NCBI RefSeq assembly: GCF_006345805.1
Contig: NC_042999.1
Location: 165,788,001-165,852,000 of the forward strand
Origin: Octopus sinensis
Lineage: Eukaryota
DNA: 64,000 nt
Reading direction: 5' to 3'
Shown: piece by piece, positions 5,679-49,965 of the stretch
How the letters are laid out: the number at the start of each line of letters is the position of its first letter
Position numbering within the stretch: the first letter of the stretch is position 1
Translations under genes and position numbers: made by a program
Notes under the pieces: generated by a model
The model's database searches: none
Told to the model about the DNA's origin: nothing
The model's input: the letters and a program-made list of their open reading frames with translations, nothing else

Positions 5679-5775
<97 letters not shown>

Positions 5776-5860: not shown

Positions 5861-5863
<3 letters not shown>

Positions 5864-7312: not shown

Positions 7313-7321
7313 GGATCTATA

Positions 7322-10346: not shown

Positions 10347-10618
10347 TAATCACTTGTATGTTACACAGGTCACAGAGACACACTTTGAATGCACACACTG
10401 TATAATAGACTCACTTGTATAGGCAGATGCATGCAATCTCACTTGTCTGAAGGCACATACTGTGCAGATTCATTTGTTGTACTCTGCATTTTTGTGAAAG
10501 TTAAGCTGGAAAGTAAGTTAATGTCGTTCCTTGTGGAAAGTCCTGACAGAAGACTACAAAAGACATTCTGTTATTGTTGCACATGTTCCGGTTTGCTAGT
10601 CTGCTGCCTAAGTCATAA

Positions 10619-10819
10619 CAACAGCAGCAGCTACTACTACTACTACTACTGCTACTGCTACTGCTACTACTACTACTACTACTACTACTACTGCTACTGC
10701 TACTGCTGCTACTGCTACTACTACTACTACTGCTACTACTACTACTACTGCTGCTGCTGCTACTGCTACTGCTGCTGCTGCGGCTGCTGCTACTACTACT
10801 ACTACTACTGCTGCTACTG

Positions 10820-10854
<35 letters not shown>

Positions 10855-10948
10855 ACTACTACTACTACTACTACTAATACTACTACTACTATTTGTACTC
10901 CTCCTCCTCCTCCTACTACTACTACTATTGCTGCTTCTACTACTACTA

Positions 10949-10981: not shown

Positions 10982-11531
10982 TTCTGTAATCTATTTATTT
11001 AATAGTTGTAAGTAAAATTAAGTGTATAGAGTGGGTGCACCCCTGTGGCATGCTATCAATGCAGTCTTTTTATTGTGAGAGATTCACCACAGATTTATTT
11101 TCTCAGTACAGATGTGATTCTACTGGTTCTTCAGCACTTGTAATTTGCCCACAGTGCAAAATAGATTCCTCACCTTGGACAAAGGACAAGGATGGACATA
11201 TAAACAAACCATGGTCCCAATGTGCTTCACGGCATTCTTGTAGCTCCTGGATGATGCCACCCCACTGGCTAGGCAGGCAAGCCAGCTTTTCCTCCAAGAG
11301 GAATGCCAGTCTATTGCAGGATTCTCTGTTTACATTGAAGAACACAATTCCCTGCTGGTCTGGAAATTACAATGGAACACCATATAACCACTAGCAGACA
11401 TACCTTAATCAACAAGGCAAGCATATTCTGTACTGTGGAGTTGACAACTTTTGTGCCTGGTGTCTTTCCTCACTCTGTGTTCAGTGCTGTTCTTTGCCAA
11501 ATTTTGAGAAGAAAAAATATTGATTGACAAA

Positions 11532-11934
11532 TCTTTATATATAAAAGTGAGGTTGTGTGAGTGTCTGTCTCCTACGATTTAGATTCCTAACTACTCCCAC
11601 ATTTTGCGGTGCAGTTTAACCAAAACCGGGTATCTTATAGTCGTGATTCATATCGAGCCCTTCTGGGTATTAGCGCGCGTCTACGATGAGTCTATGATTT
11701 ACAAAAAAATTTACCATCATTTTTTTCCATTTTAATGCATTTTTTCGCTATTATATAAGGGAAGTAACTCTCTAAAAATGTCTACGATGAGTCAACGATT
11801 TAAAAAAAAATTTACCATAATTTTTTTTTCTATTTTTAATGCATTTTTTTGCTATTTTTTTGCTATAACTCTCTAAAAATGCTTATATAGTTATTTCCCT
11901 TACAAACCCGAGCAACGCTGGGCGATACTGCTAG
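11532..11934 (+). mobile_element. Non-autonomous Helitron, copy 2
   Basis: A^TCTTTATATATAAAAG ... CCCGAGCAACGCTGGGCGATACTGCTAG^T; internal duplication of the CTACGATGAGTC...TTTAATGCATTTTT block. Confidence 0.85.
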
Positions 11935-12278
11935 TTATTTATATTTTTATTATCAACCAAAAATCCTGAAAATCATTGGCTTGTCGGGTCACCACTGAAT
12001 CTAACAAGATCAAAATATGTCCACTGCATTATCAAATACGAGACTCACTCAGGTCTACTTTCTATTTTTAATTCTAATTTTAGAGAAATTTGGCTGAAGC
12101 TGACGTACTTAATACAAAGTAACATACTCAACGTGGTGATTCAAGAAATTTTAATAAGTTAAAAACAGCACCTGTAATAAGTAAAAAAAAAAAAAATAAT
12201 AATTAGCATATTGATTAATTCTGACCAGGAAAAACAATTTCAAATTTGAATTAATTTTAATCTCAATTTGAGATTACT

Positions 12279-12530: not shown

Positions 12531-12653
12531 TATGCGTGTATATATATATATATACATGCATATATATATATATTATATATATATATATATATTATATATA
12601 TATATATATACATGCATATATATATATATATTTATATATATAAACATATATTT

Positions 12654-14573
12654 ATAGTCGACTGCTACAAGGGTAAAGGTGATGCTCTAGATAGGAATAA
12701 CTACAAGGGTATTAAACTGCTTGATTAGGTAATGAAGGTCACAGAGAGGGTCATAGTCCATCTCATTAGGGAGAGAGTCTGCTTAGATGAGATGCAGTTT
12801 GGTTTTGTTCTGGGTAGAAGCACCACCGATGCCATATTCCTGGTTCGACAACTGCAGGAGAAATACCTAGCTAAAGATAAACCCCTCTACTTAGCTTTTG
12901 TGGACTTGGAGAAAGCCTTTGACAGGGTCCCCCGATCCCTTATCTGGTGGGCGATGCGGAAACTGGAGATTGACGACTGGTTGATAAGGGCTATACAGGC
13001 CCTATACAGAGAGGCCGTTAGTAAGGTTAGGATTGGCAATGAGTATAGTGGAGAATTCCGGGTAGAAGTAGGGGTCCACCAAGGTTCAGCCCTTAGTCCC
13101 CTTCTATTCATCATAGTCCTCCAGGCAATAACAGAGGAATTCAAGATGGGTTGCCCCTGGAGCTCCTCTATGCTGATGACCTGGCCCTCATAGCAGAATC
13201 ACTACTGGAACTAGAAAAGAAATTTCGGGTGTGGAAGCTAGGTTTAGAATCAAAGGGCCTTAGAGTAAATGTAGCAAAGACCAAAGTTGTAGTAAGCAGA
13301 AAGGCGAACTCATCACACACCACCTCGGGCAGATGGCCCTGCTCGATCTGTAGAAAAGGTGTAGGTAGAAACTCCATAAGATGTACTTAGTGTAAGCTAT
13401 GGACGCATAAGAGGTGCAGCAACATCAAAGGAAAATTAACTGAGAAGATAGCTTTCATGTGTGGCAGATTCACAGGGGCAATAGACACCACAGATACTCA
13501 GAAAACAGATTCCATCATACTAGAAGAAACTAGAAGTAGTTGATAGTTTCCGCTACCTAGTGACCAAGTTAGTAGTAGAAGTGGATGCTCAGAGAGTGTC
13601 ACCACTAGAATATGAATAGCCTGGGCAAAGTTGAGAAAGCTTCTACCCCTACTGGTGACAAAGGGTCTCTCGCTCAGAGTGAAAGGTAGATTGTACGATG
13701 CATGTGTGCGAACTGCTATGCTCCACGGCAGTGAAACATGGGAAGTGACTGCGGAGGACATATACAGACTTGAAAGAAATGAAGCTAGCATGATCTACTG
13801 GATGTGTAATGTCAGTGTGCACACACCACAGAGTGTAAGCGCCCTGAAGCATCAGATGTGGTGTGCAAGAGAGACAATATGCTGTGACTGCAAAGACCCG
13901 ACAAATAATGTGAGTTCATGGCTGCTTCCTGCACCAGTTTCGCATAGCCCCAGCCCATCCAAAGTACCTTGGATTGCAGAACGACCTGCTGTGCTTACCT
14001 TGGATTGTAGGGTGACCTGCTGTGCTTGAGGAGATCTATTGAGACAAGTACATCAACATCAAAATAGATATCAAATGGAAATTGTAGTTATGATATCTGT
14101 GCCGGCAGCATGTAAAAAGCACCATCTGAATGTGGCCGATGCCAGTGCCACCTTGACTGGCTTCTGTGCCGGTGGCACATGACCTGCTGTGCTTGAGGAG
14201 AGCTATTGATTCAAGTACATCAACATCAAAATAAATATCAAATGGAAATTGCAGTTGCGATATCTGTGCCAGTGGCATGTAAAAAGCACCATCCGATGCC
14301 AGCACTGCCTTGACTGGCTTCTGTGCCGGTGGCATGTAAAAAGCACCAACTGATTGTGGCCGCTGCCAGCCTCCCCTGGCACCTGTGCTGAAGGCACATA
14401 AAAAGCACCCACTACACTCACGGGATTGTTGGCATTAGGAAGGGCATCCAGCTGTAGAAACACTGCCAGATCAGACTGGAGCCTGGTGCAGCCTCCTGGC
14501 TTCCCAGACCCCGGTCGAATGGTCCAACCTGTGCTAGCACGGAAAATGGACGTTAAACGATGATGATGATGAT
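12654..14573 (+). mobile_element. RTE LINE copy 1, 5'-truncated, frameshifted
   Basis: ORFs 12732-13193, 13151-13390 and 13631-14029 give QFGF, FVDLEKAFDRVP, GVHQG, LLYADD and a PHD-like finger; 3' UTR with duplicated block, (GAT)n tail; (TA)n on both flanks. Confidence 0.92.
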
Positions 14574-14645
14574 ATATATATACATATACTTATATATACA
14601 TATATATACATATACATATATATACATATACATACATATATATAT

Positions 14646-17559
14646 ATCGACTACATCGACTAAATCGACTACATCCTTGCCAGAAAAAGGGAAAGATGGC
14701 TGCTTATAAATGCCAAAACCTTCCCAGGCGAAGAATGCACCCCACAACATAGACTGGTAGTTAGTGACTGTAGGATCAGGTCTAAGAGGGTGACTAGAAG
14801 ACGACCGACATGGAGAAGAAGGGTCTGGAAGCTTAAAGACCCTGCGAATAGACAGAGATTTAGAGACATGTTACTTGAAGCCTTTGACGAAATGGAAGGG
14901 GGTATAGCTACGCATGGGGTACAAGACAACTGGACGCTTCTGAGGGACAACCTGCTGAAAGCCACTGACCAGATCTGTGGCTGGTGCAAAGTCCCCTTAA
15001 GACCCAAAATAACGTGGTGGTGGAACAATATTGTTGACAGGGCTATTAGACAAAAGAAACAGGCTTGGAAGGCCTGGAAGAACGGTGGTAGCAGGGAAGT
15101 GTATCAGACTGCCAGAAGGGAAGCTAGGAGACAGGTCTATCTAGCCAGAGGGGAAGCAGAAAAGAAAAACTTTGCCAATGTCCTGCGCCGTGAGGATGAA
15201 AGACTTGAGGTATTTCGTGTTGCAAGACAGTGTGTGAGAGAGAATCGTGACGTGGTAGGAGAGAAATGTGTTCGCAAGGATGACGGTTCACTTGCGCTAA
15301 ATGAGGATGCAAAGAGGGAGGCTTGGAGACGCCACTATGAAAGGTTGCTGAATGAGGAAAATGAATGGGATAAAGAGAGTCTGCCGAATGTCGACCCAAC
15401 AGAGGGCCCAGCAATCCGAGTTAACAGTTCCTTAGTAGTTAAGGCAATTACAAGCATGAAAACAGGGAAAGCCCCAGGCCCATCAGGAATTACTGCAGAG
15501 ATGCTCAAAATATCTGGTAGTGTCGGCTATAGCATAGTCACCCATATAGTTAACCAGGTGATACATGAAGGAGTCATACCCAATGACTGGTGTAGCAGCA
15601 TAATAGTCAACTGCTACAAAGGTAAAGGTGACACCCTAGATACAAATAACTACAGGGGCATCAAGCTGCTGGATCAGGTAATGAAGGTTACAGAGAGGGT
15701 TATAGCCCAATTAATTAGAGAGAGAGTTAGCTTAGATGAGATGCAGTTTGGGTTCGTGCCAGGGAAAAGTACTACTGATGCTATATTCCTGGTAAGACAG
15801 CTGCAGGAGAAATACCTAGCCAAAGATAAGCCCCTGTACCTGGCTTTTGTTGACATGGAGACAGCCTTTGACAGGGTCCCCCGATCCCTTATCTGGTGGT
15901 CAATGAGGAAACTAGGGATAGATGAATGGTTAGTGAGAGCTGTGCGAGCCATGTACAGAGACGCTGCTAGTAAGGTGAGGGTTGGCAACAAGTACAGTGA
16001 AGAATTCCAGGTAGAGGTTGGTGTCCACCAAGGTTCAGTCCTCAGTCCCCTCCTATTTATCATAGTCCTCCAGGCAATAACGGAGGAATTCAAGACAGGA
16101 TGCCCCTGGGAGCTCCTCTATGCTGATGACCTTGCTCTAATTGCTGAGTCACCATCAGAACTGGAGAAGTTTCAGGTGTGGAAACAAGGATTAGAATCGA
16201 AGGGCCTTAGAATCAACCTAGCCAAAACCAAAGTCCTAATAAGTAGGAAGGTGGACCAATCACAAATGACTTCAGGTAGATGGCCTTGCTCGATCTGTAA
16301 AAAAGGTGTAGGTAGAAACTCTATAAGGTGCACCAAGTGTAAGCTATGGACTCATAAGAGGTGCAGTAATGTCAAAGGAAGGCTAACTAGGAAAATAGTT
16401 TTTGTCTGTGGCAGATGCTCAGGAGCAATAAACACTGGAAATGTGCAGAGACCAACTTCTACCACGTTCCAGGGAGACAAACTAGAAGTAGTTGATAGCT
16501 TCCGCTGCCTAGGTGACCAAGTCAGTAGCGGGGGTGGGTGTGCTGAAAGTGTAACGGCTAGAGTAAGAATAGCCTGGGCAAAGTTTAGAGAGCTCTTACC
16601 CCTGCTGGTGACAAAAGGCCTCTCGCTCAGAGTAAAAGGCAGACTGTATGATGCATGTGTACGTACAGCCATGCTACATGGTAGTGAAACTTGGGCTGTG
16701 ACTGCTGAGGATATGCGTAAGCTCACAAGAAATGAAGCCAGTATGCTCCGATGGATGCGTAATGTCAGTGTTCATAGTCGACAGAGTGTAAGTACTTTGA
16801 GAGAAAAGTTGAACCTAAGAAGCATCAGTTGTGGTGTGCAAGAGAGACGGCTGCGTTGGTATGGTCATGTGACGAGAATGGCTGAAGATAGTTGTGTGCA
16901 AAAGTGCTACACTCTAGCAGTTGAGGGAACCTGTGGAAGAGGTAGACCCAGGAAAACCTGGGACGAGGTGGTGAAGCACGACCTTCGAACTTTAGGTCTC
17001 ACCAAGGAAATGACTAGAGACCGAGACCTCTGGAAGTATGCTGTGCGTGAGAAGACCCGGCGAGACTAGTGAGGCCATAACCCGTGGCCCCTACCTGGGA
17101 CGTAGTCAGTCCACCTGTGCATACCTTCCTTCTTGTGACACTTGTGAAGACCTGTTGAGGCAAGTGAAAATCAAACCAAAATCAAACCAAATCAAAATAG
17201 ATGAACATCAATGGAATTTGTATCTTTGTGGTACCAGTGCCGGTGGCACATAAGAAAACCATCCGAACGTGGCCGTAGCCAGTACTGCATCGACTGGCCT
17301 CCGTGCTGTGGGCACGTAACAAACACCATCCGATTGTGGCCGTTCGCCAGCCTCGTCTGGCACCTGTGTCGGTGGCACATAAAATCACCCACTACACTCT
17401 CGGAGTGGTTGGCGTTAGGAAGGGCATCCAGCTGTAGAAACACTGCCAGATCTGACTGGCCTGGTGCAGCCTTCGGGCTCCCCCCAAACCCCAGTTGAAC
17501 CGTCCAACCCATGCTAGCATGGAAAGCGGACGTTAAACGATGATGATGATGATGATGAT
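14646..17559 (+). mobile_element. RTE LINE copy 2, truncated within the APE endonuclease, with an intact RT region
   Basis: Begins at IDYILARK...QHRLVV (end of APE domain); RT motifs; ~480-bp 3' UTR; tail CCATGCTAGCATGGAAAGCGGACGTTAAAC(GAT)n. Confidence 0.95.
14790..17069 (+). CDS. RTE LINE reverse transcriptase ORF (759 aa in the track; frame open from about 14664), lacking most of the endonuclease
   Basis: GKAPGPSGI, NYRGIKLL, QFGFVPGKST, AFDRVP, GVHQGSVLSPLLF, LLYADD, C4-H-C3 finger, RLRWYGH, GRGRPRKTW; no stops. Confidence 0.9.
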   Translation: MTRRRPTWRRRVWKLKDPANRQRFRDMLLEAFDEMEGGIATHGVQDNWTLLRDNLLKATDQICGWCKVPLRPKITWWWNNIVDRAIRQKKQAWKAWKNGGSREVYQTARREARRQVYLARGEAEKKNFANVLRREDERLEVFRVARQCVRENRDVVGEKCVRKDDGSLALNEDAKREAWRRHYERLLNEENEWDKESLPNVDPTEGPAIRVNSSLVVKAITSMKTGKAPGPSGITAEMLKISGSVGYSIVTHIVNQVIHEGVIPNDWCSSIIVNCYKGKGDTLDTNNYRGIKLLDQVMKVTERVIAQLIRERVSLDEMQFGFVPGKSTTDAIFLVRQLQEKYLAKDKPLYLAFVDMETAFDRVPRSLIWWSMRKLGIDEWLVRAVRAMYRDAASKVRVGNKYSEEFQVEVGVHQGSVLSPLLFIIVLQAITEEFKTGCPWELLYADDLALIAESPSELEKFQVWKQGLESKGLRINLAKTKVLISRKVDQSQMTSGRWPCSICKKGVGRNSIRCTKCKLWTHKRCSNVKGRLTRKIVFVCGRCSGAINTGNVQRPTSTTFQGDKLEVVDSFRCLGDQVSSGGGCAESVTARVRIAWAKFRELLPLLVTKGLSLRVKGRLYDACVRTAMLHGSETWAVTAEDMRKLTRNEASMLRWMRNVSVHSRQSVSTLREKLNLRSISCGVQERRLRWYGHVTRMAEDSCVQKCYTLAVEGTCGRGRPRKTWDEVVKHDLRTLGLTKEMTRDRDLWKYAVREKTRRD

Positions 17560-18367
17560 ATATAAAAGAGGTGAGGACCAAAATCATTCAAAGGGATGTT
17601 AACTTGGATTTGAATTGAATTAAAGTTCGTCTACACTTACAATCTTTTCCTTTCCTTATGTAACGGATGAGGTTGAGTTTCTTCATTATGTAAGGATGAA
17701 AGAATGAAAGAACAATGATTGAAGTTGTAAAGAAAATATTTATTTTTACCGTTACATTATGCAATACCTTGCCTTGACAGGCAGGTGATAAACTCCAAGA
17801 GCATGCAAAGTAAAAAAGTTAATTTCGGCCTGTATATTCTTATTGTAGTAGTAAACTATAGAGAGAGATATGCAGAGAAGAGAAATTGAGTCTGTGAAAG
17901 TGAGAGAGTGTGGGACAAAACAACTGCTCCGTTGTTCTCTTTCACCTTCTCTTTTGAGATGATGTTTTGTTTAGCCTGTCAGCCAGACTCTGTTCTCACT
18001 GAGTTATCACCAAGTGACTAACTGATTGAGTTGTCATCAGCCAACTAACTGATTTTTGCTTGGGGTTCTTGCTTTTATAACTATCCAAGAAGGATAGACA
18101 TATTGTTGAGAACAATGGATTTAGTCTGTGGTACTTATCTTACTTCTAGCTTTTGGTGGTCTAGGAGAGGTTAGAAAGGTCAAGTGGTGAAGATATTATT
18201 TCGGCCTAGCTAAAGGCATCTGGCATATGTAAACTGTCACAGAAAAACTATTGTTCCACCATGAGAAAAGTTCTGTTGAAGTGTTAATTTAAATTTGGCT
18301 ATGGTGGATTGAATCCACTTCATGCCTGCAAGATCCACTACACTTATACTTCATATATATATATATA

Positions 18368-20424
18368 TCATCATCATCATCATCATCATTTAGCGTCCGT
18401 TTTCCATGCTAGCATGGGTTGGACAGTTTAACTGGGGTCTGTGAAGCCGGAAGGCTTCATCAGGCCCAGTCAGATTTGGCAGTGTTTCTACGGCTGGATG
18501 CCCTTCCTAACGCCAACCACTCCGCGAGTGTAGTGGGTGTTTTTTACGTGCCACCTGCACAGGTGCCAGACAGAGCTGGCACAATGGCCACGAACGGATG
18601 GTGCTTTTACGTGCCACCGACACGGGGCCAGACAGAGCTGGCAAACGGCCACGAACGGACGGTGCTTTTATGTGTCACCGGCACGGGGGCCAGCCGAGGC
18701 TGGCAATGAACACGAGCGGATGGTGCTTTTACGTGCCACCGACACGGGGCCAGACAGAGCTGGCAAATGGCCACGAACGGACGGTGCTTTTACGTGTCAC
18801 CGGCACGGGGGCCAGCCGAGGCTGGCAACGAACATGAACGGATGGTGCTTTTACGTGCCACCGACACGGGGGCCAGACAGAGCTGGCAAACGGCCACGAG
18901 CGAACGGTGCTTTTATGTATCACCGACACGGGTGCCAGATGAGGCTGGCAGCGGACACGGATATATGATTTGATTTTGATTGTTCTCACTGGTCTTCTCA
19001 CGCACAGCATACTTCCACAGGTGTCGGTCTCTGGTCATTTCCTTGGTGAGACCTAGAGTTCGAAGGTCGTGCTTCACCACCTCGACCCAGGTTTTCCTGG
19101 GTCTACCTCTTCCACAGGTCCCCTCAACTGCCAGGGTGTGGCACTTTTTCACACACCTATCTTCGTCCATTCTCGCCACATGACCATACCAGCGCAATCG
19201 TCTCTCTTGCACACAACATCTGATGCCTCTTAGGTCCAACTTTTCTCTCAAGGTACTTACACTCTGTCGACTATGAACACTGACATTACACATCCAACGG
19301 AGCATACTAGCTTCATTTCTTGCGAGCTTACGTAAATCCTCAGCAGTCACAGCCCAAGTTTCACTACCATGTAGCATGGCTGTACGTACACATGCATCAT
19401 ACAGTCTGCCTTTTACTTTGAGCGAGAGGCCTTTTGTCACCAGTAGGGGTAAGAGCTCTCTAAACTTTGCCCAAGCTATTTTTACTCTAGCAGTTACACT
19501 TTCAGCACACCCGCCCCCGCTACTGACTTGGTCACCTAGGTAGTGGAAGCTATCAACTACTTCTAGTTTTTCTCCCTGAAACGTGATAGAAGTTGGTCTC
19601 TGCATATTTTCAGAGTTTATTGCTCCTGAGCATCTGCCACAGACAAAAACTATTTTCCTAGTTAGTCTTCCTTTGACATTACTACATCTCTTATGTGTCC
19701 ATAGCTTACATTTGGTGCATCTTATAGAGTTTCTACCTACGCCTTTTCTACAGATTGAGCAAGGCCATCTACCTGAAGGCGTTTGTGATTGGTCCACCTT
19801 CCTACTTATTAGGACTTTGGTTTTGGCTAGGTTGATTCTAAGGCCCTTCGATTCTAAACCTTGCTTCCACACCTGAAACTTCTCCTCCAGTTCTGATAGA
19901 GACTCAGCAATTAGAGCAAGGTCATCAGCATAGAGGAGCTCCCAGGGGCATCCTGTCTTGAATTCCTCCGTTATTGCCTGGAGGACTAAACCTTGGTGGA
20001 CCCCAACCTCTACCCTGAATTCTTCACTGTACTCGGTGCCAACCCTCACCTTACTAGCAGCGTCTCTGTACATGGCTTGTACAGCTCTCACTAACCATTT
20101 ATCTATCCCTAGTTTCCTCATTGACCACCAGATAAGGGATCGGGGGACCCTGTCGAAGGCTTTCTCCATATCGACAAAAGCCAGGTATAGGGGTTTGTCT
20201 TTGGCTAGGTATTTCTCCTGCAGCTGTCTTACCAGGAAAATAGCATCAGTAGTACTTTTCCCTGGCACGAACCCAAACTGCATCTGATCGAAGCTAACTC
20301 TCTCTCTAATTTGTTGGGCTATAACCCTCTCTGTAACCTTCATTACCTGATCTAGCAGCTTGATACCCCTGTAGTTATTTGTATCTAGGGCGTCACCTTT
20401 ACCTTTGTAGCAGTTGACTATTAT
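18368..20424 (-). mobile_element. RTE LINE copy 3, 5'-truncated, tail-to-tail with copy 2
   Basis: ORF 18913-20343 (476 aa) closely similar to copy 2, with an in-frame deletion after GVHQG; 3' UTR with a 7-unit tandem array; (CAT)n at 18368. Confidence 0.95.
18535..18965 (-). repeat. Tandem array of ~61-bp units in the RTE 3' UTR
   Basis: Seven units starting GGTG(C/T)TTTTA(C/T)GTG near 18537, 18600, 18661, 18722, 18783, 18843 and 18906. Confidence 0.9.
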
Positions 20425-20437
20425 ATATATATATATA

Positions 20438-24134: not shown

Positions 24135-25010
24135 TTGCTCAGACAATTATCTGAATTTAGGTACTGCAGAACACTAATGGCTAGCTCCGAGGGGCATATC
24201 AAAGTGCACAGTCGCCTTGCCTGGAAAGTACTTAGTGATATTGAAGAATATTTGCCCCATTCCACGTCTCCAAAGAATTCATGAAGAGGGTCTTCATAGC
24301 AGCCATCAAGAAAATTCTCCTCAACAGGTGTGAAGCTTGGATTGCCACTAGATCCATAGCCAAGTCTCTCAATAGCTGCTACACTTAAATGCTCAAAATA
24401 GCCTTTGGCACTATTGGATGCCGAGAGTGACCTAGAGCAACTCTGTGGTGACCTCCCCTAGTTGACCAACAAGATGGCAGAATGAGCTTGCTCTCTTACT
24501 CTTTTACTCTTTTACTTGTTTCAGTCATTTGACTGCGGTCATGCTGGAGCACCGCCTTTAATCGAGCAACTCGACCCCGGGACTTATTCTTTTTGTAAGC
24601 CCAGTACTTATTCTATCGGTCTCTTTTGCCGAACCGCTAAGTAACAGGGACATAAACACACCAGCATTGGTTGTCAAGCAATGCTAGGGGGACAAACACA
24701 GACACACAAACAAACACACACACACATATATATATATACATATATACGACAGGCTTCTTTCAGTTTCCGTCTACCAAATCCACTCACAAGGCATTGGTCG
24801 GCCCGGGGCTATAGCAGAAGACACTTGCCCAAGGTGCTATGCAGTGGGACTGAACCTGGAACCATGTGGTTGGTTAGCAAGCTACTTACCACACAGTCAC
24901 TCCTGCGCCTGGGTATTCTAAGAAACTCAGGGAGAGTTGCTCCATGGGAGGATGAACTATGGGCATCCACACTGACCCCATGGGAGCAGCTAACTTACAC
25001 AACCAAGTAC
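24135..25010 (+). mobile_element. Degraded LINE RT 3' fragment (RTEX-like), interrupted by SINE A
   Basis: Remnants FRY..LMASSEGHIKV..LAWK, CEAW, KSLNSCYT, DLP; the reading resumes after the SINE at 24909. Confidence 0.55.
24495..24908 (-). mobile_element. SINE A, full length
   Basis: Complete reverse-complement copy. Confidence 0.9.
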
Positions 25011-29799: not shown

Positions 29800-30012
29800 A
29801 TAATGGTTTCAAATTTTGTCACATGGCTAGCAGTTTTAGGGTGAGTCGATTACATCCACCCTAGTGTTCAACTGGTACCTATTTTATTGACCCCAAAAGG
29901 TAGAAAGGCAAATTTGACCCTGGCGGACTTGGAACTCAGAATGTAAAGACGACCAAATTGCCTGCCACTAAGCATTGTAGCTGGTGTGCTAACGATTCTG
30001 TCAGTTCACAGC
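29800..30012 (-). mobile_element. SINE B
   Basis: Homologous to 2071-2295. Confidence 0.7.
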
Positions 30013-30579
30013 AACTCGAATAATAAATGTCTTAGTGAAATTGGTATTATTTCATTCTTTCATGATTTTCACTAAGAAAAAAAAAACACTCGGATTTTTT
30101 GCATGGAATCAAGTACCCTGACGCTCAGAAAAAAGTGGGAGTGGGAAACCAAACCCTTTATATCCCAGAATCATTTGAAATTTTTTTCCGTTGACTGAAT
30201 TCCAGTGACTTCCTAGTATGCTACAAAACCCTTTTTTGGGTTCAGAAAACGGGATGGGGGGTGGGGGTGGAACACCCAGAAATTTCACCCCCACCCCCAT
30301 TTTCAAATATTTTTTGCTGTTTCTTTCTTTACCCATAATTTTAGATAACGTTTTGCAGAAATACGTTTCGAGAGAGTGTGGATTACATTAGATTGAAAAT
30401 TCAAAGAAGTTTGAAATGAATTAGTGAAAATGCAGAGCTTATAGAAGTTAGTGGTAATGAAGTGTGGAGAGATAAACAATAAATTCATCTTAAAAAAAAA
30501 ACATTAGTTTTTGCATGTATGAGTGAAATGGAGAAAGAAGTATATTGACAAAATATCTTTTTCCTACCTCTTAAAATCA

Positions 30580-31058
30580 TAATCATCATCGTTTAACGTC
30601 AGCTTTCCATGCTAGCATGAGTTGGATGATTTGATTGAGGACTGGTGAGCCAGAAGGCTGCACCAGGCTCCAATCTGATCCGGCAGAGTTTCTACAGCTG
30701 GATGCCCTTCCTAACGCCAACCACTCTGAGAGTGTAGTGGGTGCTTTTACATACCACTGGTACGAGGGCCAGTCAGGCGGTACTGGCAACGGCCACGCTC
30801 AAGTGGTGATCTTTACGTGCCACCTGCACAGGTGCCAGTCCAGCGTCACTGGCAACGACCTCGCTCAAATGTTTTTTCACATGCCACCGGCACAAGTGCC
30901 AGTAGGGCGACGCTGGTAACAATCATGCTCGGATGGTGCATTTTACATGCCACCGGCACGGAAGCCAGTCTGCTGCTCTGGCAGCGATCACGCTTGGATG
31001 GTGCTCTTGCACTCCACTCGCACGGGTGCCAGTCATCGAATTTGCAAATTTGACTTGA
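30580..31058 (-). mobile_element. RTE-family 3'-UTR insertion in the left arm of the palindrome
   Basis: (CAT)n GTTTAACGTC..CCATGCTAGCATG tail plus repeated UTR units. Confidence 0.85.
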
Positions 31059-31870
31059 GATTTTCCTAGCTTGCCAATCTTTAGTCAAACCGTCCAACCC
31101 ATGCGAGAATGGAAAGCAGACGTTAAACAATGATGGGGAAGATGATGTATAATGATATATATAATTATGATAGATTGTTCAACCATTCAATGTTTAGGCA
31201 AACTTTGTCACCCACTCTCTCTCTCTCTCTCTCCCCATACAAAAATGAAACACATTTCGGCACCAAAAGTTGCAAAGGGAAAATCTATTTATGGTGCCGA
31301 AATGTGTTTCATTTTTGTATGGGGAGAGAGAGAGAGAGAGAGAGAGTGGGTGACAAAGTTTACCTAAACATTGAATGGGTGAACAATCTATCATAATTTT
31401 ATATATCATTATACATCATTGTTTAACGTCTGCTTTCCATTCTGGCATGGGTTGGACGGCTTGACTGAGGACTGGCAAGCCAGGAAAATCTATTCGGGGT
31501 TATTATATTATATCCAGTGATTTTAAGAGGTAAGAAAAAGATATTTTGTTAATATTATACTTTTACTCCGTTTCACATGCAAAAACTCTAACGTGTTATT
31601 ATTTTTTTTTTTAAGATGAATTTATTGTTTATCTCTCCACACTTCGTTACCATTAACTTCTATGACTATATTTAGTCATTTCAAACTTCTTCAAATTTTC
31701 GATCTAATGTATTCCACACTCTCTCGAAAACGTATTTCTGCAAAATGTTATATAAAATTATGGTAAAGAAAGAAATAGCAAAAAAATATTTGAAAATGGA
31801 GGTGGGGGTGAAATTTCTGAGGGTTCTACTCCCACCCCACCCCGTTATCCGGACCCAGAAAAGGCTTTTG

Positions 31871-32903
31871 GGTTAATGTTTACATTCTTGACCCGCAAAT
31901 GAAAATCCAAGGAAAATATACTGGAATGAGTGTTAAACAATGTGTAGGAAACGAATATGAAAAAAAAAAATGCGTGCAAAGCAACGGGAGGGTGGAGAGG
32001 ACATCGGAAAACTCACAAAATCCGAGTTTTTCCCTCATAACTTATAGGAAAATGGATTTTATTCAATGAAATTTTATAGAAATACCTTTCAAACGGCATA
32101 CATTACGATTATAAAGTAATTTGTGGGGAAAATCTTTTCCAAAGGGTGGGGAGAGAACTTCGGAAAATTCACAAGATCCAAGTTTTCTCCTCATAACTGT
32201 ATATGTGTATGTATATATATATATGTGTGTGTGTGTGTGTATGTATATATAGCTATCTCTCTCTATATATAGAGATAGAGAGAGAGAAAGTAATAACGAT
32301 GAAGAATTAAAAAAGCGTAAAAATAATTGAAAATGAAATAAAATTGAAGCCAAAACATTAAAAATTATTGAAAGAGGGTAGGAATAAACACTACATAGTG
32401 TAGTAGTACTACGCTAGGGTATCTGTAGAAAGTTGAATGTGATTTCAGAATAACGAAGAAAATTCAGATCTTGGGAATTTTCTGAAAGTCCTCTCCTCAC
32501 CTCAAGATTTTCCCCACAAAATACTTTATAGTCATAATGTATGCCGTTTCAATGGTATCTATATAAAATTTCATTGAAAAAACCCCATTTTCCTAAAAAG
32601 TTATGAGGGAAAAACTCGGATTTTGTGAATTTTCCGAAGTCTTCTCCTCACCTCCTTGGAAAAGATTTTCCCCACAAATTTCTATATAATCTTAATGTAA
32701 AATTTCATTGAAAAAAACCTCATTTTCCTAAAAGTTATGAGGGAAAAGCTCGGATCTTGTGAATTTTCCAAAGTCCTCTCCCTACCCTCCCGTTGCTTTG
32801 CACGCATTTTTTTTTAATATTCGTTTCCTACATATTGTTTTACACCCATTCCATTATATTTTGTTTGGATTTTCCTTTCCGGGTCAAGATGTAAACATTA
32901 ATC
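31871..32903. mobile_element. Foldback-type non-autonomous DNA transposon with long modular TIRs and an 8-bp TSD
   Basis: Ends GGTTAATGTTTACATTCTTGACCCG / CGGGTCAAGATGTAAACATTAATC; TSD GGCTTTTG (31863-31870) / GGGTTTTG (32904-32911); arms about 330 bp or more with ~150-bp subrepeats. Confidence 0.8.
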
Positions 32904-34003
32904 GGGTTTTGTAGCACATTAGGTCACTGGAATTCAGTCAACGAAAAAAAAAAAAAAATTCCAATAATTCCGGGCTATGGCGGGGTCCGGTTTCACTCAC
33001 ACCCCCTTTTTTTTCCGAACAAAAATAAGGGGTTTGCAGATGCAAAAAATCCGAGCTTTTTTTTTTTCTTTGGGAAAATCGTGCAGGTGTAAAGATCAGT
33101 GCGAGTAGGAGGTGAATTTCCCAGGCTTCTACCTCACCCCGTCCCGTTTTCCGGACCCATAAAAGGGTTTTGTAGCATATTAGGAGGTCACCGGAATTCA
33201 TGCTTTACCGTGAAGTTATGTTTTTGTGTTTTTTGACTGGCTAATACGAGTCTCCGTACTGTAATTGTTATAGGTACACACACACATACATAGATGTATG
33301 TATATTAATGCATGCTCTTTTTTTTTTTTAACTGGCATCGCCATAAGGTGAAACGATGACGCCTCAACTTCTTTAGGTCTCTCCGTGCCCCGGTAGGACA
33401 AAGCTGTTTTCACGTTTGAGATTTGGCCTGAATGCTCGCGTTAAATAGGCGTCTAAAAGGCGCGACCACAATGGTCAGTTGGTGGTGGAAGACTTGATTG
33501 CTTTTGTGTGTGTGAATGCTTGTGTGTTTATTTTACCTTGTCAATTTGATAGTTTATTATTTCGTATTTATGTTGAACTTGTATATATAAGTCAATGTTC
33601 TCGAGACAGAGGAATCATAACTTTATTGCATTTTTTTCTTTTGCTAACCTCGTGGCCAATATATAATGGAGATTTTTATTTATTGTCTGTAATAATAATA
33701 ACAAAAATAATTTTGTATGATACAATCGGTAGAATGTCAAATAATATGCTCTGTAATTAGTCGCCTCAATCTATTTTCTAAGTTCAAATCTCGCTTAGGT
33801 CGGCTTTATTTTTCACCTTTCCCGGATTCAATAAAATATGTATTCGATCTAATCGAATTTCTCTCTCTGCCAATATTTGTGGCCTCGTGCTTAAGTGAGA
33901 AATCAATATTTTTTTTATTGTACCAGTCTTTGACCGATGATTCTACCACTCCCCTCTATGTTTGTAATTTTGCTTCCCTCTTCAGGAAGAAGAAGAAGAA
34001 GCG

Positions 34004-34190
34004 GTAGAGCGTCGGTCGGAATGCGTTTAGTGTTTCAATTACGTCCCTTTACGTTCTAAGCTGAAACCCCGCCGGAGATGACTTTCACTGTTCGTGGGTC
34101 GATAAAATAAGTACCAGGCAGGGAAAGCTTTAATCGACTGGTCCTATCTCTCCAAAATGTGTGGCCTCGTGCCATTCTTGAGAATCACTG
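34004..34190 (+). mobile_element. Degraded SINE B
   Basis: GGGTCGATAAAATAAGTACCAG core and GTGGCCTCGTGCC tail. Confidence 0.6.
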
Positions 34191-36640
34191 TTGTCACGTG
34201 TGGACACAAAAGTACAAGATAATTCCGCGATTGCAAGGTAAGACACCCTGGGATGAGTAGATGGGATATGACCAGATATCACAGACAGCACTTGACGTTC
34301 AACAAGTGCAGTTTACTTGGGATAGTACTGCTGCTGCCGCTGCTACTGCTGCTACACGACGATAGTTGTGATGCTGATTGTAATGACAATGATGATACCT
34401 GATGGTGGTACTGTTTCTTGCTTTTATAATAATCGTTTTAATGTCACTTGAAAAGTGCAGTCGTCGTCACAAGTGTTCTGCAGCCGTCCATCAAACACTA
34501 CTACACTCTTCTTACACTGCATTCAATAGATTCTCTCTCTCCCCATCTGTCTCTCTATCTATAAATATGTCTCTCTGTTTTGCTTCCCGTCTATGTTGCC
34601 TCTTTTGTTTAAATATTTCTTTTTAGCTAATCACTATTTCGAATCCAACATTCTTCGCCAATTCCACTTGCTTTCATAATTATTATTTATTTTAATTACG
34701 ACAGTTCACTGTTATTATTATTCCGAGTGTTTTTAAATAATATGATTTCACTAATTGGCTTTTTTTTTTCTCTGTAAATTATTTTTTCCTCGCCTTATTA
34801 TTTCTTTTTTATAATCCACCCGTTTCAAATCCCCGAAACATGATTCAACATCATTATATATTTATATATGTGTATGTATACACAGCATTTTTATAATGGT
34901 GAAATAATGTTATTTTCTGTGCAGAGTCCTGATTATTTATTTATATTATAAACATAAATAGTTTTGACTCTTTAAACATAAATATTTCACCAATATTATT
35001 TTCCAACAAACGTTACAGCAAAAATTTTTAAAAAATAATAAACCTATCTAACTTCAAGACAACATTATCGACTTGAAGAGTTGTATTTATTGATCTTTTC
35101 TTGTTGTTTCGTTTGGAAAAAAAAAAAAAAAACCTGCATATTTTCCAGGGATTAAGGGTACCTGTTGATTTGAAGTGGGTTCTGTGTTACAGAAATATTT
35201 GCGCTAATATCCGACCAAGGTGCTTCATTGTAGTTTTTTCTTGTTTTTTTTGAAGATATATAATTCTAGTGAACATAAGATATTCATCTGGAGAACACGA
35301 GACTATTTGAGAGAGCTAATTAGATTGTATCTGGTTTATCTAGTAATGCCATTTTAAGTGGACATGTCTGTTCCGGTATGCTACATCTACTTTTACATTG
35401 TCACCCTGGGTCACTGCATTCCTTCAAAACGTTGTGACTATCGGTTTTCTTATAACAGGGCACAAAGTTTTAGTGTTTTAGAGGAGGAGGGGAATAACGC
35501 ATACCGTGCAATATATTCACGCCTTTACCACCGGCTTTAGTGTCGTCGAGTGGATAAGAAATTCGCTTCGTAATCTTGACATTCCAGGTTCAATCCCACT
35601 GCACAACATACTGAACCTCTGCTTGACCCCCATGCATTGTGAAAGAAAATGGATTGACAAACTGTAGAAGATAATTAAACTTTAGCACAGCGTCACCATG
35701 GAATTTATCAGAGCCTTGTCACTATTTAAAGGAATATATTATCTATATCGAACCGGAAAACAAAATTCTGTATTAAAAGTGGTAGATATGGTTGTGAGCG
35801 CGTAACAGTGAGTTGTCTAATGAGCATATCAATGAAAACTAGCTTTCCACGTCCAGTGAATTTTGTGTACGCAGAACCTTGTTTAATCCCAGATAACTCT
35901 GATGAAGCAAACCTAGGATTAAAAGCCTTCCGACCATAACCACATCATCACTTATTTAGACTGTGTGTTTAGGGTTACATAAGTTAACGGTATTTCTGTT
36001 TTTTGTTTTTTTTTAACAGTAGGTGTGTGATTTGAAGGATATCTGACTGCTATTTCTAGCAATTTTAGTGGATGTCTAAAATTGCTTTATTTTGCCGGTG
36101 TCTCGTCACTACCCGGACATCAGTTTCAGCTCCCAATTGGTCCATTACTCACAATACCGAGCTGTGTAAGTTTAAGGTTGGTTGGTAGGTAGGTAGGTAG
36201 GTAGGTTTTAATCACAGCAGGCTTAACGAAATCCGGGTAAGATCTTATAATTTTCACGTTAATACAAAAAAGAATGAAAAGTTTTAATCATAACAATTTT
36301 ATCATACAGTAATGAAGAGAATGAATTAAAAACAGTGTTCAATTTCTCTTATTTGCGTCAAGGGCGCCATAATGACAATATGAAACACAATTTAAAACTG
36401 ATACTGCACAAATGAACATACGGTAGAATTGTGTGTATGTAAACAGCAGTTTGATAACTGTCAGGACACGAAACTCATGACCATTAAGTCACCCTGTAAC
36501 TTCTGCCACTTAATATGTATAGGATTCATATGTGTACTTACATGTGCGATGTAGTCATGTCTTTTTTTTTGTTTTAGTCTGGAAGTAGGGGGTGTGACCA
36601 CTGTCTTTGCAAATCTGTGACCAGTGAGATTGGTGTCTTC

Positions 36641-42742: not shown

Positions 42743-43493
42743 CCAATATCATAATATAAATGATATATAAATATATGCATATATACATACATGTATGTAC
42801 ATACCGACATATGTATATATACATGCATATATGAGTACAGGACATCAAAAAAACGTTGAACACAATGAGAAATAAAAACATAGAAACAAACTTTTTTTCG
42901 AACAACAAAAAAAAACAAACAGAGAAACGAGATACAACATAAAGAATATTTCCCTTCTTCAGTTGTCCCTGTTTCATCTACTCCACGTTCCGAAGGCAAG
43001 GACAAGACGAGACTTCATTGAAAGAGTCCTTCCTCCAAAGCAAAGTGCTTATACTGTCTTCCTTAGCGTTCATAATAATTTTTCCATTGTCTTGGCTTAA
43101 CAACCCTCACCGTTTGTTTTTACTGTTTTGTTCTCACTGTCCTGTTCTTGTTACCACTTTCACCCTCCGCAATAAATTCTGAATTTTAATTTACTTTGCA
43201 GGAAGGACTGTTTCAACGAAGTCACGTCTTGTCCTTGCCTTTGAAACACGGAGTAGATGAAACAGGGACAACTGAAGAAGGGGAATATTCTTTATGTTGT
43301 ATGGTCTCGTTTCTCTGTTTTTTTCATTGTCTGAAAAAAAAGTTTGTTTCTATGTTTTTGTTTCTCATTGTGTTCAACATTTTTTTGTTGTCCTATACCC
43401 ATATATGCATGTATATATACATATATATGTAGGTATGTACACATATATATGTATATATGCATATATTTATATATTATTTATATTATTATATGG
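42743..43493. repeat. ~300-bp inverted repeat with a 145-bp spacer (possibly a Penelope-type inverted end)
   Basis: 42743-43044 is the reverse complement of 43190-43493 at roughly 85% identity by eye. Confidence 0.85.
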
Positions 43494-44559: not shown

Positions 44560-44922
44560 GTTGTTGTTCAGTCCCACTGCATGGCATCTTGAGCAAGTGT
44601 CTTCTGCTATAGCCCCGGGCCGACCAATGCCTTGTGAGTGGATTTGGTAGACGGAAACTGAAAGAAGCCTGTCGTATATATGTATATATATATATATATG
44701 TGTGTGTGTATGTGTATATGTTTGTGTGTCTGTGTTTGTCCCCCTAGCATTGCTTGACAACCGATGCTGGTGTGTTTACGTCCCCATCATTTAGCGGTTC
44801 GGCAAAAGAGACCAATCGAATAAGTACTGGGCTTACAAAGAATAAATCCCGGGGTCGATTTGCTCGACTAAAGGCGGTGCTCCAGCATGGCCGCAGTCAA
44901 ATGACTGAAACAAGTAAAAGAG
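44560..44922 (+). mobile_element. SINE A (5'-clipped)
   Basis: Body and tail match the copy at 6186. Confidence 0.88.
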
Positions 44923-45171
44923 TATGTGTATATAACTATATGATTATACAAAATTATATATATACATATAACTATATACATACATATATTGTTATTATTA
45001 AACAAGAATGTTGTTGACAGCTAACCCATCACTGGACAAAATTATAGAATAACACATCAGGTTAATGTAAAATTGTTTTTATTTTAACTGAACATAAAAA
45101 AGCATTAATACACACACACACACACACACACACATTTAATTTATACATTGAAAGTTAAGCTGAAATACTCA

Positions 45172-45590
45172 ACTACTCTTTTACTCTTTTACTTGTTTCA
45201 GTCATTTGACTGCGGCCATGCTGGAGCACCGCCTTTAATCGAGCAAATCGACCCCAGTACTTATTCTTTTGTAAGCCCAGTACTTATTTTATCGGTCTCT
45301 TTTGCCGAACCGCTAAGTAACGGGGACATAAACACACCAGCATCGGTTGTCAAACAATGCTAGGGGGACAAACACAGACACACAAACACATACACACACA
45401 CATATATATATATATACATATATACGACAGGCTTCTTTCAGTTTCCGTCTACCAAATCCACTCACAAGGCTTTGGTCGGCCCGAGGCTATAGTAGAAGAC
45501 ACTTACCCAAGGTGCCACGCAGTGGGACTGAACCCGGAACCATGTGGTTGGTAAACAAGCTACTTACCACACAGCCACTCCTGCGCCTGA
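45172..45590 (-). mobile_element. SINE A, full length
   Basis: Complete reverse-complement copy. Confidence 0.9.
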
Positions 45591-49604: not shown

Positions 49605-49965
49605 GCTGGCTGTGCAGTAAGAAGTTTTCTTCACAATGACATGATTCAGTCCCACTGGGTGGCACCTTGGGCAAGTGTCTTCTATAGCCTCAGATCAACC
49701 AAGCCCTTGTTAGTGGATTTGATAGATGATAACCAAAAGAAGCTTGTCATGTGTGTGTGTGTCTTTATATCTGTGTTTGTCCACCACCACTGCTTGACAG
49801 CTGGTGTTGGTGTGTTTACATCCCCATAACAAACAGCTCAGCAAAAGAGACCGATATGCACCAGGCTTTAAAAAAGTTAAGAACTGGGGTCAATTCACTC
49901 AACAAAAATTCTTCAAGGTGGTGCCCCAGCATGGCCACAGTCTAATAGCTGAAACAAGTAAAAGA
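49605..49965 (+). mobile_element. SINE A, older copy
   Basis: Diverged head, body and tail. Confidence 0.7.

What the first reader, a model, noticed from the sequence alone, without database searches (positions are those of the whole stretch)
30061..33083. ~3-kb nested palindrome whose arm identity rises towards the centre
Seen: removing an RTE-UTR insertion (30580-31058) from the left arm and a foldback element (31871-32903) from the right leaves two ~750-bp arms around a 26-nt spacer (31266-31291). By eye, the innermost ~135 bp differ by 3 substitutions plus small indels, the next 54 bp by 6, and the outermost part is much more diverged. A short RTE tail is mirrored in both arms, so it predates the duplication or was copied across. 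Transposon TIRs are usually best conserved at the tips, the reverse of this. Inference: ongoing arm-to-arm conversion through hairpin/cruciform repair, or serial re-formation of the centre; it lies just upstream of CpG-richer unique DNA at 33.3-33.5 kb.
Basis: partly seen in the sequence, partly recalled or inferred. Interest (0 to 1): 0.75.

Follow-up and report, generated by a model that had tools for sequence, protein, structure and literature searches.

The report
Decaying DNA palindrome with fresher centre
A 3-kb stretch of repeat-rich, non-coding, eukaryote-like DNA is an old inverted duplication, later split by two transposon insertions; its halves match perfectly beside the centre, about 95% over the next 500 bases and about 85% at the outer ends, most likely because the halves kept correcting each other near the centre, which is a known kind of behaviour and not a new system.

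Summary
The structure is real. After removing a 479-bp LINE 3'-UTR copy (30580-31058) and a 1033-bp foldback MITE with an 8-bp target duplication (31871-32903), two ~750-nt arms align around a 26-nt spacer.

Arm identity falls with distance from the centre (logistic slope +0.26 per 100 nt, p=1.7e-5). This survives other alignment settings, low-complexity masking and removal of CpG columns. The fall is not smooth:
- about 70 nt with no substitution;
- a ~94-95% plateau out to ~550 nt;
- ~84-87% in the outer ~250 nt.

A single step at ~550 nt fits as well as a linear gradient (AIC 392.9 vs 392.8). Divergence is also raised within 50 nt of both insertion sites.

Arm-private insertions and 5-16% divergence exclude an assembly artefact. 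No other arm copy lies in the window apart from a 90-nt older paralogue at 33108-33200.

Best reading: one old inverted duplication, homogenised arm-to-arm only in the long uninterrupted inner blocks. The main rival is a two-layer origin by fold-back template switching. Neither can be settled from one haplotype. This is an ordinary member of a known kind, with modest interest.

The parts
30061..30277 (-). Left arm, outer tier (segments Y_L 30061-30195 and X_L 30196-~30277). It pairs with 31819-31870 plus 32904-33083 at ~84% substitution identity.
30278..30579 (-). Left arm, middle tier. It pairs with 31518-31818 at ~94%.
30580..31058 (-). Arm-private insertion: a 5'-truncated LINE 3'-UTR copy, with its tail at 30580 and five ~65-bp internal tandem units at 30745-31034. 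It replaces 27 nt that the right arm keeps; no TSD was seen.
   Evidence: homology to the 3' UTR after the RT ORF 14790-17069
31059..31265 (+). Left arm, inner tier. It holds an old 78-nt LINE tail fragment (31059-31135, + strand), a degenerate ATGA/ATA tail, unique DNA and a (TC)n run.
   Evidence: (I2, I4, I13)
31266..31291 (.). Spacer or loop: 26 nt by strict identity, 19 nt unpaired in the DNA minimum-free-energy fold. It contains GGAAAATCTATT (31278-31289), the same 12-mer as at 31483-31494.
31292..31490 (+). Right arm, inner tier, including the mirrored LINE tail fragment (31414-31490, - strand).
31491..31517 (+). 27 nt present only in the right arm. This is the target sequence lost from the left arm at the LINE insertion. 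Its first 4 nt complete the second copy of the 12-mer (31483-31494).
31518..31870 (+). Right arm, middle tier plus the first part of X_R (from ~31810). TSD copy 1, GGCTTTTG, lies at 31863-31870.
31871..32903 (.). Arm-private insertion: a foldback MITE with ~330-nt subrepeated arms (90.6% substitution identity), a microsatellite-rich middle, 15-nt TIRs matching 14/15 and an 8-bp TSD matching 7/8.
   Evidence: (I3, I5, I7, I9)
32904..33083 (+). Right arm, outer tier (rest of X_R, then Y_R). TSD copy 2, GGGTTTTG, lies at 32904-32911.
33108..33200 (+). X': a solo ~90-nt older paralogue of arm segment X, direct with respect to the right arm. It serves as an outgroup to both arms.
   Evidence: (D14, D17, I8)

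Best explanation
This is one old, local inverted duplication of ordinary non-coding DNA. The copied DNA already carried a 5'-truncated LINE tail and a (GA)n run, and the duplication produced a ~750-nt-arm quasi-palindrome with a short loop.

Each arm later took a private transposon: a LINE 3'-UTR copy in the left arm ~210 nt from the centre, and an 8-bp-TSD foldback MITE in the right arm ~610 nt from the centre.

The arms have not diverged freely. Arm-to-arm copy correction has kept re-equalising the long uninterrupted inner homology blocks. The correction could be intrachromatid gene conversion, or hairpin-templated or template-switch repair. It works poorly close to the two heterologies. It no longer works in the short, indel-ridden outer block that the MITE cut off.

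The result is a substitution-free core, a ~95% plateau and a ~85% outer tier.

Shown: the anatomy, the order of events (LINE tail before the duplication; the two insertions after it) and the non-uniform divergence.

Inferred: that homogenisation, rather than layered origin or rate variation, causes the non-uniformity. No function is implied.
For: - Both arms share one LINE insertion, with the same truncation point and the same flank. The arms are therefore copies of one segment.
- The arms are each other's closest relatives compared with the X' paralogue. X' differs alone at 14 sites, against 3-4 sites where only the right arm differs and 6 where only the left arm differs.
- Uniform divergence is rejected at p=1.7e-5. 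The result is robust to alignment settings, low-complexity masking and CpG removal.
- Inside the MITE site, divergence within 50 nt of the two insertion sites is 11.8%, against 4.9% elsewhere. Fisher p=0.0086, but the test was post hoc, and p ranges from 0.004 to 0.09 with window size. This is the edge effect expected if correction needs flanking homology.
- The outer tier (15.9% substitutions) is more diverged than the MITE's own arms (9.4%, p=0.028), while the inner tiers (5-6%) are less diverged. That order is what one expects if the inner tiers were equalised after the MITE arrived.
- The private LINE copy is 13.5% from the window consensus, yet the arm blocks either side of it differ by only ~5-6%.
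- Six of the seven comparable inverted pairs tested in the same window (arms ~300-1450 nt, spacers 146-3457 nt) have flat profiles. The method therefore does not create gradients.
- The central 434 nt fold as one hairpin in single-stranded DNA (-205.7 kcal/mol, z=-38).
- Arm-to-arm conversion in palindromes and inverted repeats is established (PMC1803023; PMC8327919 and the works cited there).
Against: - There is only one haplotype and no outgroup locus, so no conversion event is actually observed.
- No tract-like patchiness is seen beyond a smooth trend (p=0.25-0.5).
- The best step lies at column ~551-560, which is 55-63 columns inside the MITE site (614). A step placed exactly at the insertion sites fits worse (AIC 400 vs 393).
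- Column 551 coincides with the start of homology to X'. This model does not explain that coincidence.
- The 'age' of the LINE copy is confounded by subfamily structure. It shares the motif GAyTGAGGACTGG with the arm fragment and not with the majority consensus.
- The MITE's arms need not have been identical when it inserted.
- Four of the five differences next to the LINE junction that could be polarised are derived in the arm that carries the insertion. Insertion-associated mutagenesis could explain them instead.
Confidence: 0.42

Rival explanations
1. Layered origin, the reader's 'serial re-formation'. An older inverted pair (the X-Y tier) flanked a single-copy spacer. One or more fold-back template switches during replication or repair then copied that spacer in inverted orientation. 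The inner ~550 nt of the arms are therefore simply younger than the outer ~250 nt. A later centre break left the present spacer.
For: - A single step at column 551 fits as well as a gradient. The middle and outer tiers show no internal slope.
- The step coincides with the start of the segment that has an older paralogue, X'.
- The 12-mer GGAAAATCTATT occurs only twice in the 64 kb, against 0.02 expected. One copy is in the spacer and the other at 31483-31494. Together they flank exactly the right inner arm, as a fold-back-and-return switch or a templated filler would leave them.
- Structural change concentrated at palindrome centres is documented (PMC8327919).
Against: - Neither arm shows a junction, indel or filler at column ~551.
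- Non-CpG identity of the inner and middle zones is equal (95.6 vs 95.2%). The 12-mer therefore does not mark an age boundary.
- By my own estimate, some exact 12-mer direct repeat somewhere in this 3-kb region is expected about 0.6 times by chance. 10-11-mers are common there.
- The model does not predict the raised divergence next to the LINE junction.
Confidence: 0.25
2. The whole 3-kb unit is one copy of a multicopy foldback or long-TIR transposon family. Its consensus already has near-perfect inner repeats and looser outer repeats, so the pattern is inherited and not made locally.
For: - The window is full of foldback-like inverted pairs: 6185-7722, 42746-43491, 44566-45533 and the nested MITE.
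- A third partial copy of segment X lies next door.
Against: - No other copy of the inner, middle or outer arm sequence lies in the 64 kb.
- There were 0 exact hits for a 32-mer of the core in metagenome contigs.
- No TSD or defined termini are visible at 30061/33083 (read by eye).
- The arms contain a 5'-truncated LINE tail plus its flank and a microsatellite. That looks like captured genomic DNA, not a transposon body.
Confidence: 0.13
3. A single duplication with no homogenisation. The outer part merely mutates faster or aligns worse, because of homopolymers, G-runs, CpG decay and its position beside a CpG-rich, presumably unmethylated domain.
For: - The outer tier is rich in A/T and C/G runs and has the most gap events per column.
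- 13 of the 60 mismatches are in CpG context. In 10 of those 13 the right arm keeps the CpG.
- CpG o/e is ~1 from 32.8 to 34.2 kb, against 0.45 for the window.
Against: - The trend survives masking of low-complexity columns (p about 1e-5 to 4e-4).
- It also survives removal of all CpG-context columns (86.6% vs 95-96%, p=3.5e-4).
- A threefold difference in rate over 250 nt of similar GC content (0.33-0.39) would be unusual.
Confidence: 0.12
4. The inner stem is kept paired by selection, because the locus is transcribed into a hairpin RNA such as an endo-siRNA or miRNA-like precursor.
For: - The core is a long, near-perfect hairpin.
- The centre gives generic sub-threshold hits to many miRNA precursor models.
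Against: - Every Rfam hit is below its gathering score, occurs on both strands and goes to unrelated families. Any long hairpin behaves this way.
- There are no expression data.
- The stem consists of a LINE tail, a microsatellite and AT-rich DNA.
Confidence: 0.05
5. Assembly artefact, from a chimeric fold-back read.
For: Short-spacer palindromes are a known product of long-read chimeras. This rests on my own knowledge.
Against: The arms differ by 5-16% and by many indels. Each carries a private, well-formed transposon insertion whose empty site is visible in the other arm.
Confidence: 0.02

Closest known systems
Palindromes and inverted repeats homogenised by arm-to-arm gene conversion: primate X/Y palindromes and Caenorhabditis intergenic inverted repeats (PMC8327919, PMC1803023)
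   Same: Two inverted arms lie around a short spacer. Their identity is higher than free divergence would leave. The centre is the structurally active part.
   Different: The arms here are ~0.75 kb, not >8 kb, and 84-100% identical, not >99%. They carry no genes. Identity is tiered, and the outer part seems to have escaped correction. Conversion is inferred here and not observed.
Quasi-palindrome correction and short template-switch mutations: Ripley-type hairpin-templated synthesis, and template switching that creates or perfects hairpins (from my own knowledge, not checked in a paper here)
   Same: The action is short-range and centred on the loop, so it would make the bases nearest the loop the most perfect. 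It can leave short templated filler such as the 12-mer in the spacer.
   Different: Described events span tens of nucleotides. Here the equalised region is ~550 nt per arm. No individual switch event can be reconstructed.
Foldback transposons and long-TIR MITEs
   Same: The unit is long inverted arms with little between them. It sits in a genome region rich in such elements, and a true foldback MITE is nested inside it.
   Different: No TSD, no defined termini and no second copy were found. The arms contain a captured LINE fragment and unique DNA. The tips are the worst-conserved part.
Centre-break stabilisation of perfect palindromes: central deletion or filler that creates a spacer (from my own knowledge)
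   Same: A 26-nt asymmetric spacer sits between otherwise perfect inner arms. Part of it duplicates nearby arm sequence.
   Different: This explains only the spacer, not the tiered identity.

Membership tests
Conversion-maintained large palindrome (sex-chromosome type) | Arms of at least 8 kb with at least 99% arm-to-arm identity | tested here: not met
   The arms are ~750 nt after removing the insertions. Overall substitution identity is 91.3%, ranging from 84% to 100% by tier.
Conversion-maintained large palindrome (sex-chromosome type) | Demonstrated conversion: both arms share derived states relative to an orthologous outgroup, or paralogous sequence variants turn over in a population | not testable with these tools
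   Only one haplotype is available. The source genome is absent from the searchable collections.
Foldback / long-TIR transposon (the whole 30061-33083 unit) | Multiple copies in the genome | tested here: inconclusive
   There is no other copy in the 64-kb window apart from the 90-nt X' fragment, and there were 0 metagenome hits. The whole genome could not be searched.
Foldback / long-TIR transposon (the whole 30061-33083 unit) | Target-site duplication flanking defined termini | tested here: not met
   Homology fades at about 30055-30061 and 33083-33090. The flanks do not repeat (TTCATTCTT vs GGTGTAAAG; read).
8-bp-TSD foldback MITE (nested element 31871-32903) | TIRs, an 8-bp TSD and an empty site | tested here: met
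   The TIRs match 14/15. The TSD is GGCTTTTG / GGGTTTTG. The left arm shows the unoccupied site AAAAGGGTTTTGTAGC. The superfamily (hAT-like) is inferred from TSD length only.
Non-LTR retrotransposon 3' fragment (30580-31058, and the mirrored 78-nt pieces) | Collinear homology to the 3' UTR and tail of an element that encodes APE and RT | tested here: met
   The fragment matches 17229-17547, directly downstream of ORF 14790-17069. That ORF carries RVT_1 plus a sub-threshold PHD match, and its homologues carry the Exo_endo_phos domain. At least 13 tail copies lie in the window. Assignment to the RTE clade specifically was not tested.
Template-switch / fold-back inverted duplication | An inverted copy adjacent to its source, with a short spacer and microhomology or templated filler at the junction | tested here: inconclusive
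   The adjacent inverted copy and the 26-nt spacer are present. The 12-mer shared by the spacer and the arm is suggestive but could be chance. The original junctions have since diverged.
Known miRNA / hairpin RNA family (Rfam) | A score at or above the family's gathering threshold | tested here: not met
   The best hits score 57-60 bits against thresholds of 76-100. They occur on both strands and go to unrelated families.

The most novel reading that the evidence does not exclude
The tiering is a natural record of hairpin or cruciform formation in a germ line. On this reading, intrastrand pairing nucleates at the loop and templated correction spreads outwards. It is stopped by heterologies, so that transposon insertions 'uncouple' the distal arm segments, which then decay. 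If this were general, identity profiles of small palindromes could map how far secondary structures extend in vivo, and could date when each insertion arrived.
Probability: 0.15. Interest if true: 0.55.

Novelty: new member of a known kind. Interest (0 to 1): 0.27.

Why it matters
It is a clean small example of how a non-coding palindrome ages. Private transposon insertions break the arms into homology blocks, and the blocks then seem to follow different fates: a perfect core, a ~95% plateau and an ~85% cut-off tip. With haplotype or sister-species data, the locus could separate centre-seeded, hairpin-templated correction from ordinary gene conversion and from layered origin. On present evidence it adds no new mechanism and no function.

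Tried and rejected
- A step model placed a priori exactly at the two insertion sites fits worse than a linear gradient or a step at column 551 (AIC 400.1 vs 392.8/392.9).
- A test for conversion-tract patchiness (longest perfect run, windowed chi-square against the fitted gradient) found nothing.
- Dating the private LINE copy against a window-derived consensus gave 13.5%. The estimate is confounded by subfamily structure, so it counts only as weak support.
- The search for a second footprint at the column-551 boundary found only 10-11-mers of chance quality.
- The search for other copies or haplotypes found nothing. Two exact-pattern scans of metagenome contigs gave 0 hits (arm core 32-mer, then a LINE-tail 36-mer). 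Two look-ups of arm ORFs in public assemblies also found nothing.
- Host identification through the LINE ORF failed: the best relative is only 54% identical.
- Rfam gave only generic sub-threshold hairpin hits.
- Literature searches found no paper reporting a centre-to-tip identity gradient in small palindromes. Not finding one in this library does not prove novelty.
Full report
**Context**

The window is AT-rich (38.7% GC), CpG-depleted (o/e 0.45) and packed with microsatellites, LINE tails and foldback-like inverted pairs. It looks like eukaryotic, probably animal, intergenic or intronic DNA.

A LINE ORF at 14790-17069 carries RVT_1 and a PHD-like match below Pfam's cut-off. Its relatives carry an AP-endonuclease domain, but the best is only 54% identical. 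The host genome is therefore not in the searchable collections, and I could not name the organism.

**Checking the observation**

Self-BLAST of 29.5-34 kb gives three collinear inverted matches:
- 31058-31491 against itself;
- 30224-30579 against 31518-31870;
- 30061-30231 against 32904-33083.

I removed 30580-31058 and 31871-32903 and aligned the arms outwards from the centre. This gave 688 aligned columns with 60 substitutions.

*The left-arm insertion.* It is a 5'-truncated copy of the 3' UTR of the window's LINE family, in minus orientation with its tail at 30580. It replaces 27 nt that the right arm keeps (31491-31517), and I saw no TSD.

*The right-arm insertion.* It is a 1033-bp foldback MITE. 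Its TIRs are GGTTAATGTTTACAT / GATTAATGTTTACAT and its 8-bp TSD is GGCTTTTG / GGGTTTTG. The left arm preserves the empty site.

*The mirrored LINE tail.* Both arms contain the same 78-nt LINE tail fragment, with the same truncation point and the same flank. The arms are therefore copies of one pre-existing segment.

*Artefact.* Arm-private insertions plus 5-16% divergence rule out an assembly artefact.

**Is the gradient real?**

Yes in coarse terms.
- Substitution identity per 100 columns from the centre is 0.979, 0.932, 0.928, 0.963, 0.912, 0.896, 0.854, 0.840.
- A logistic regression gives +0.26 log-odds of mismatch per 100 nt, LRT p=1.7e-5. The fitted mismatch rate rises from 2.8% at the centre to 19% at 800 nt.
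- The slope survives five scoring schemes, MAFFT and masking of homopolymers and microsatellites.
- It also survives removal of all CpG-context columns (slope 0.24, p=3.5e-4).
- The same procedure gave flat profiles for six of the seven other inverted pairs with arms of ~300-1450 nt in the window, the nested MITE's own arms among them. The exception is 9947-10347 / 11531-11935, which is also graded (p=0.008). Of two very small self-palindromes, one is flat and one (60667-60823) runs the other way.

**Shape of the gradient**

It is tiered rather than smooth.
- The first ~70 aligned columns have no substitution, only a (GA)2 length difference.
- Columns 70-551 sit at ~94-95%.
- Columns 551-804 sit at ~84% (86.6% without CpG columns).
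- A single step at column 551 has AIC 392.9 against 392.8 for the linear model.
- Within-zone slopes are non-significant in the middle and outer zones, and significant only in the inner zone (p=0.004).
- Column 551 (left 30277 / right ~31810-31819) is where homology to a third, partial copy of the arm begins. It lies 63 columns inside the MITE insertion site.
- Mismatches are not detectably patchy beyond the smooth trend.

**The third copy**

X' (33108-33200) is a ~90-nt solo paralogue of arm segment X, direct with respect to the right arm. In a three-way alignment:
- X' differs alone at 14 sites;
- the left arm differs alone at 6 sites;
- the right arm differs alone at 3-4 sites.

The two arms are therefore sister sequences and X' is an older outgroup. 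Nothing beyond X' on the right, or beyond 30061 on the left, is homologous. A SINE-like repeat lies 60 nt outside the left end.

**Further features that bear on mechanism**

(a) *Heterology edges.* Inside the MITE site, divergence within 50 nt of the two insertion sites is 11.8%, against 4.9% elsewhere (Fisher p=0.0086). The test was post hoc, and p runs from 0.004 to 0.09 for windows of 30-60 nt.

Next to the LINE junction, polarising with the LINE family shows 4 of 5 differences derived in the left, insertion-bearing arm. Next to the MITE site, polarising with X' shows no excess in the insertion-bearing arm.

(b) *Relative ages.* These three values are suggestive only:
- the MITE's own arms differ by 9.4%;
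- the outer tier differs by 15.9% (p=0.028 against the MITE's arms);
- the inner tiers differ by 5-6%.

If the MITE arrived with identical arms and rates are uniform, the inner tiers coalesce after the MITE insertion and the outer tier before it.

The private LINE copy is 13.5% from the window consensus, while the arm blocks either side of it differ by ~5-6%. That copy shares subfamily-specific bases with the arm fragment, however, so the 13.5% overstates its age.

(c) *The 12-mer.* The spacer contains GGAAAATCTATT (31278-31289). The only other copy in the 64 kb lies at 31483-31494, at the outer end of the right inner arm, where the arm-private 27 nt begin (0.02 copies expected).

Together the two copies flank the right inner arm exactly. 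That is what a fold-back-and-return template switch would leave, or a templated filler after a centre break.

By my own estimate, some 12-mer direct repeat in a 3-kb AT-rich region is expected about 0.6 times by chance. 10-11-mers are common here. I therefore treat it as a lead only.

(d) *CpG asymmetry.* The right arm's outer part lies inside a ~1.4-kb domain with CpG o/e ~0.8-1.2. In 10 of 13 CpG-context mismatches the right arm keeps the CpG. This asymmetric CpG decay adds to the gradient but does not explain it.

(e) *Hairpin potential.* As single-stranded DNA, the central 434 nt fold into one hairpin (-205.7 kcal/mol, z=-38).

**Interpretation**

Free, uniform divergence after a single duplication is rejected. 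Two explanations fit almost equally well.

*Preferred (about 0.42).* One old inverted duplication was followed by arm-to-arm copy correction. Correction persists in the long uninterrupted inner blocks, is weak near heterologies, and has ceased in the short, indel-ridden outer block beyond the MITE. The points in favour:
- it accounts for the plateau;
- it accounts for the raised divergence at both heterology edges;
- it fits the age ordering relative to the MITE;
- it matches an established process (PMC1803023, PMC8327919).

The substitution-free core next to the loop suggests an extra centre-seeded component, either hairpin-templated correction or a recent centre repair.

*Main rival (about 0.25).* A layered origin. 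An older X-Y inverted pair had its single-copy spacer later copied in inverted orientation by fold-back template switching. This explains the step at the X boundary and gives the 12-mer a role. It predicts neither the heterology-edge effect nor the equal divergence of the inner and middle zones.

*Lesser rivals:*
- an inherited family pattern (no other copies seen, but the genome could not be searched);
- local rate or alignment heterogeneity (it survives the masking controls);
- selection on a hairpin RNA (only generic sub-threshold Rfam hits);
- an assembly artefact (excluded).

**Comparison with what is known**

The locus behaves like conversion-maintained palindromes. It fails their operational definition on arm length and on identity, and conversion itself was not observed.

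It resembles quasi-palindrome or template-switch correction in being centre-weighted, but the scale (~550 nt per arm) is larger than the described events.

As a whole it is not a demonstrable foldback transposon: it has no TSD, no second copy, and its tips are the worst-conserved part. It does contain one.

**Verdict**

It is a new member of a known kind, of modest interest.

**Limits**

All inference rests on 60 substitutions in one haplotype. Several tests (the step at column 551, the edge effect, the 12-mer) were framed after looking at the data.

Noticed in passing
window 33108-33200: A solo ~90-nt paralogue (X') of arm segment X lies directly after the right arm. It is older than the split between the arms. 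It could be a remnant of a ~261-bp tandem duplication or of a small dispersed repeat.
   Followed up: partly
window 31278-31289 and 31483-31494: The 12-mer GGAAAATCTATT occurs only twice in the 64 kb: in the palindrome spacer and at the outer end of the right inner arm. It may be a footprint of template switching or a templated filler, or it may be chance.
   Followed up: partly
window 32800-34200: A CpG-island-like domain (CpG o/e ~0.8-1.2 against 0.45 for the window) starts inside the right arm's outer part. In 10 of 13 CpG-context arm differences the right arm keeps the CpG. No gene or RNA family was identified there.
   Followed up: partly
window 31068-31089: A cluster of four transitions, derived in the left arm, falls within ~20 nt next to the 5' junction of the private LINE insertion. 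This may be insertion-associated mutagenesis or a conversion edge effect.
   Followed up: partly
window 9947-10347 and 11531-11935: Another inverted pair (~400-nt arms, 1.2-kb spacer) also has identity falling from the inner to the outer end: 0.97, 0.93, 0.89, 0.85 (p=0.008). An ORF with no Pfam match (10389-10877) lies in the spacer.
   Followed up: partly
window 12635-20437: Two LINE copies lie tail-to-tail in inverted orientation, with ORFs at 14790-17069 (+) and 18913-20343 (-). They are 92.5% identical over 1.46 kb with a flat identity profile, and form a much larger palindrome-like structure.
   Followed up: partly
window 6185-7722, 42746-43491, 44566-45533: Further foldback-like inverted pairs have 300-400-nt arms, 88-92% identity, spacers of 146-725 nt and flat identity profiles. 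Some share sequence with other loci in the window (45185-45577 / 49607-49965), so they are probably MITE families.
   Followed up: no
window 29838-30000: A SINE-like repeat has three other copies in the window (about 2130-2282, 53841-53951, 57958-58060). It lies 60 nt outside the left end of the palindrome.
   Followed up: no
window 30584-30653 vs 31066-31135: The private LINE copy and the old LINE fragment lie head-to-head in the left arm, with 5' ends within 8 nt of each other. They are only 80% identical, so they are two separate insertions at almost the same point.
   Followed up: partly
window 24389-24468 (-): ARAGORN calls a 'tRNA-Pyl (cta)'. In this context it is probably a tRNA-derived repeat or a pseudogene.
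   Followed up: no
window 5000-6000: A purine-rich tract with extreme strand skew (GC skew 0.75, AT skew 0.48) and many GA-microsatellite matches accounts for the spurious 262-aa ORF at 5113-5901.
   Followed up: no
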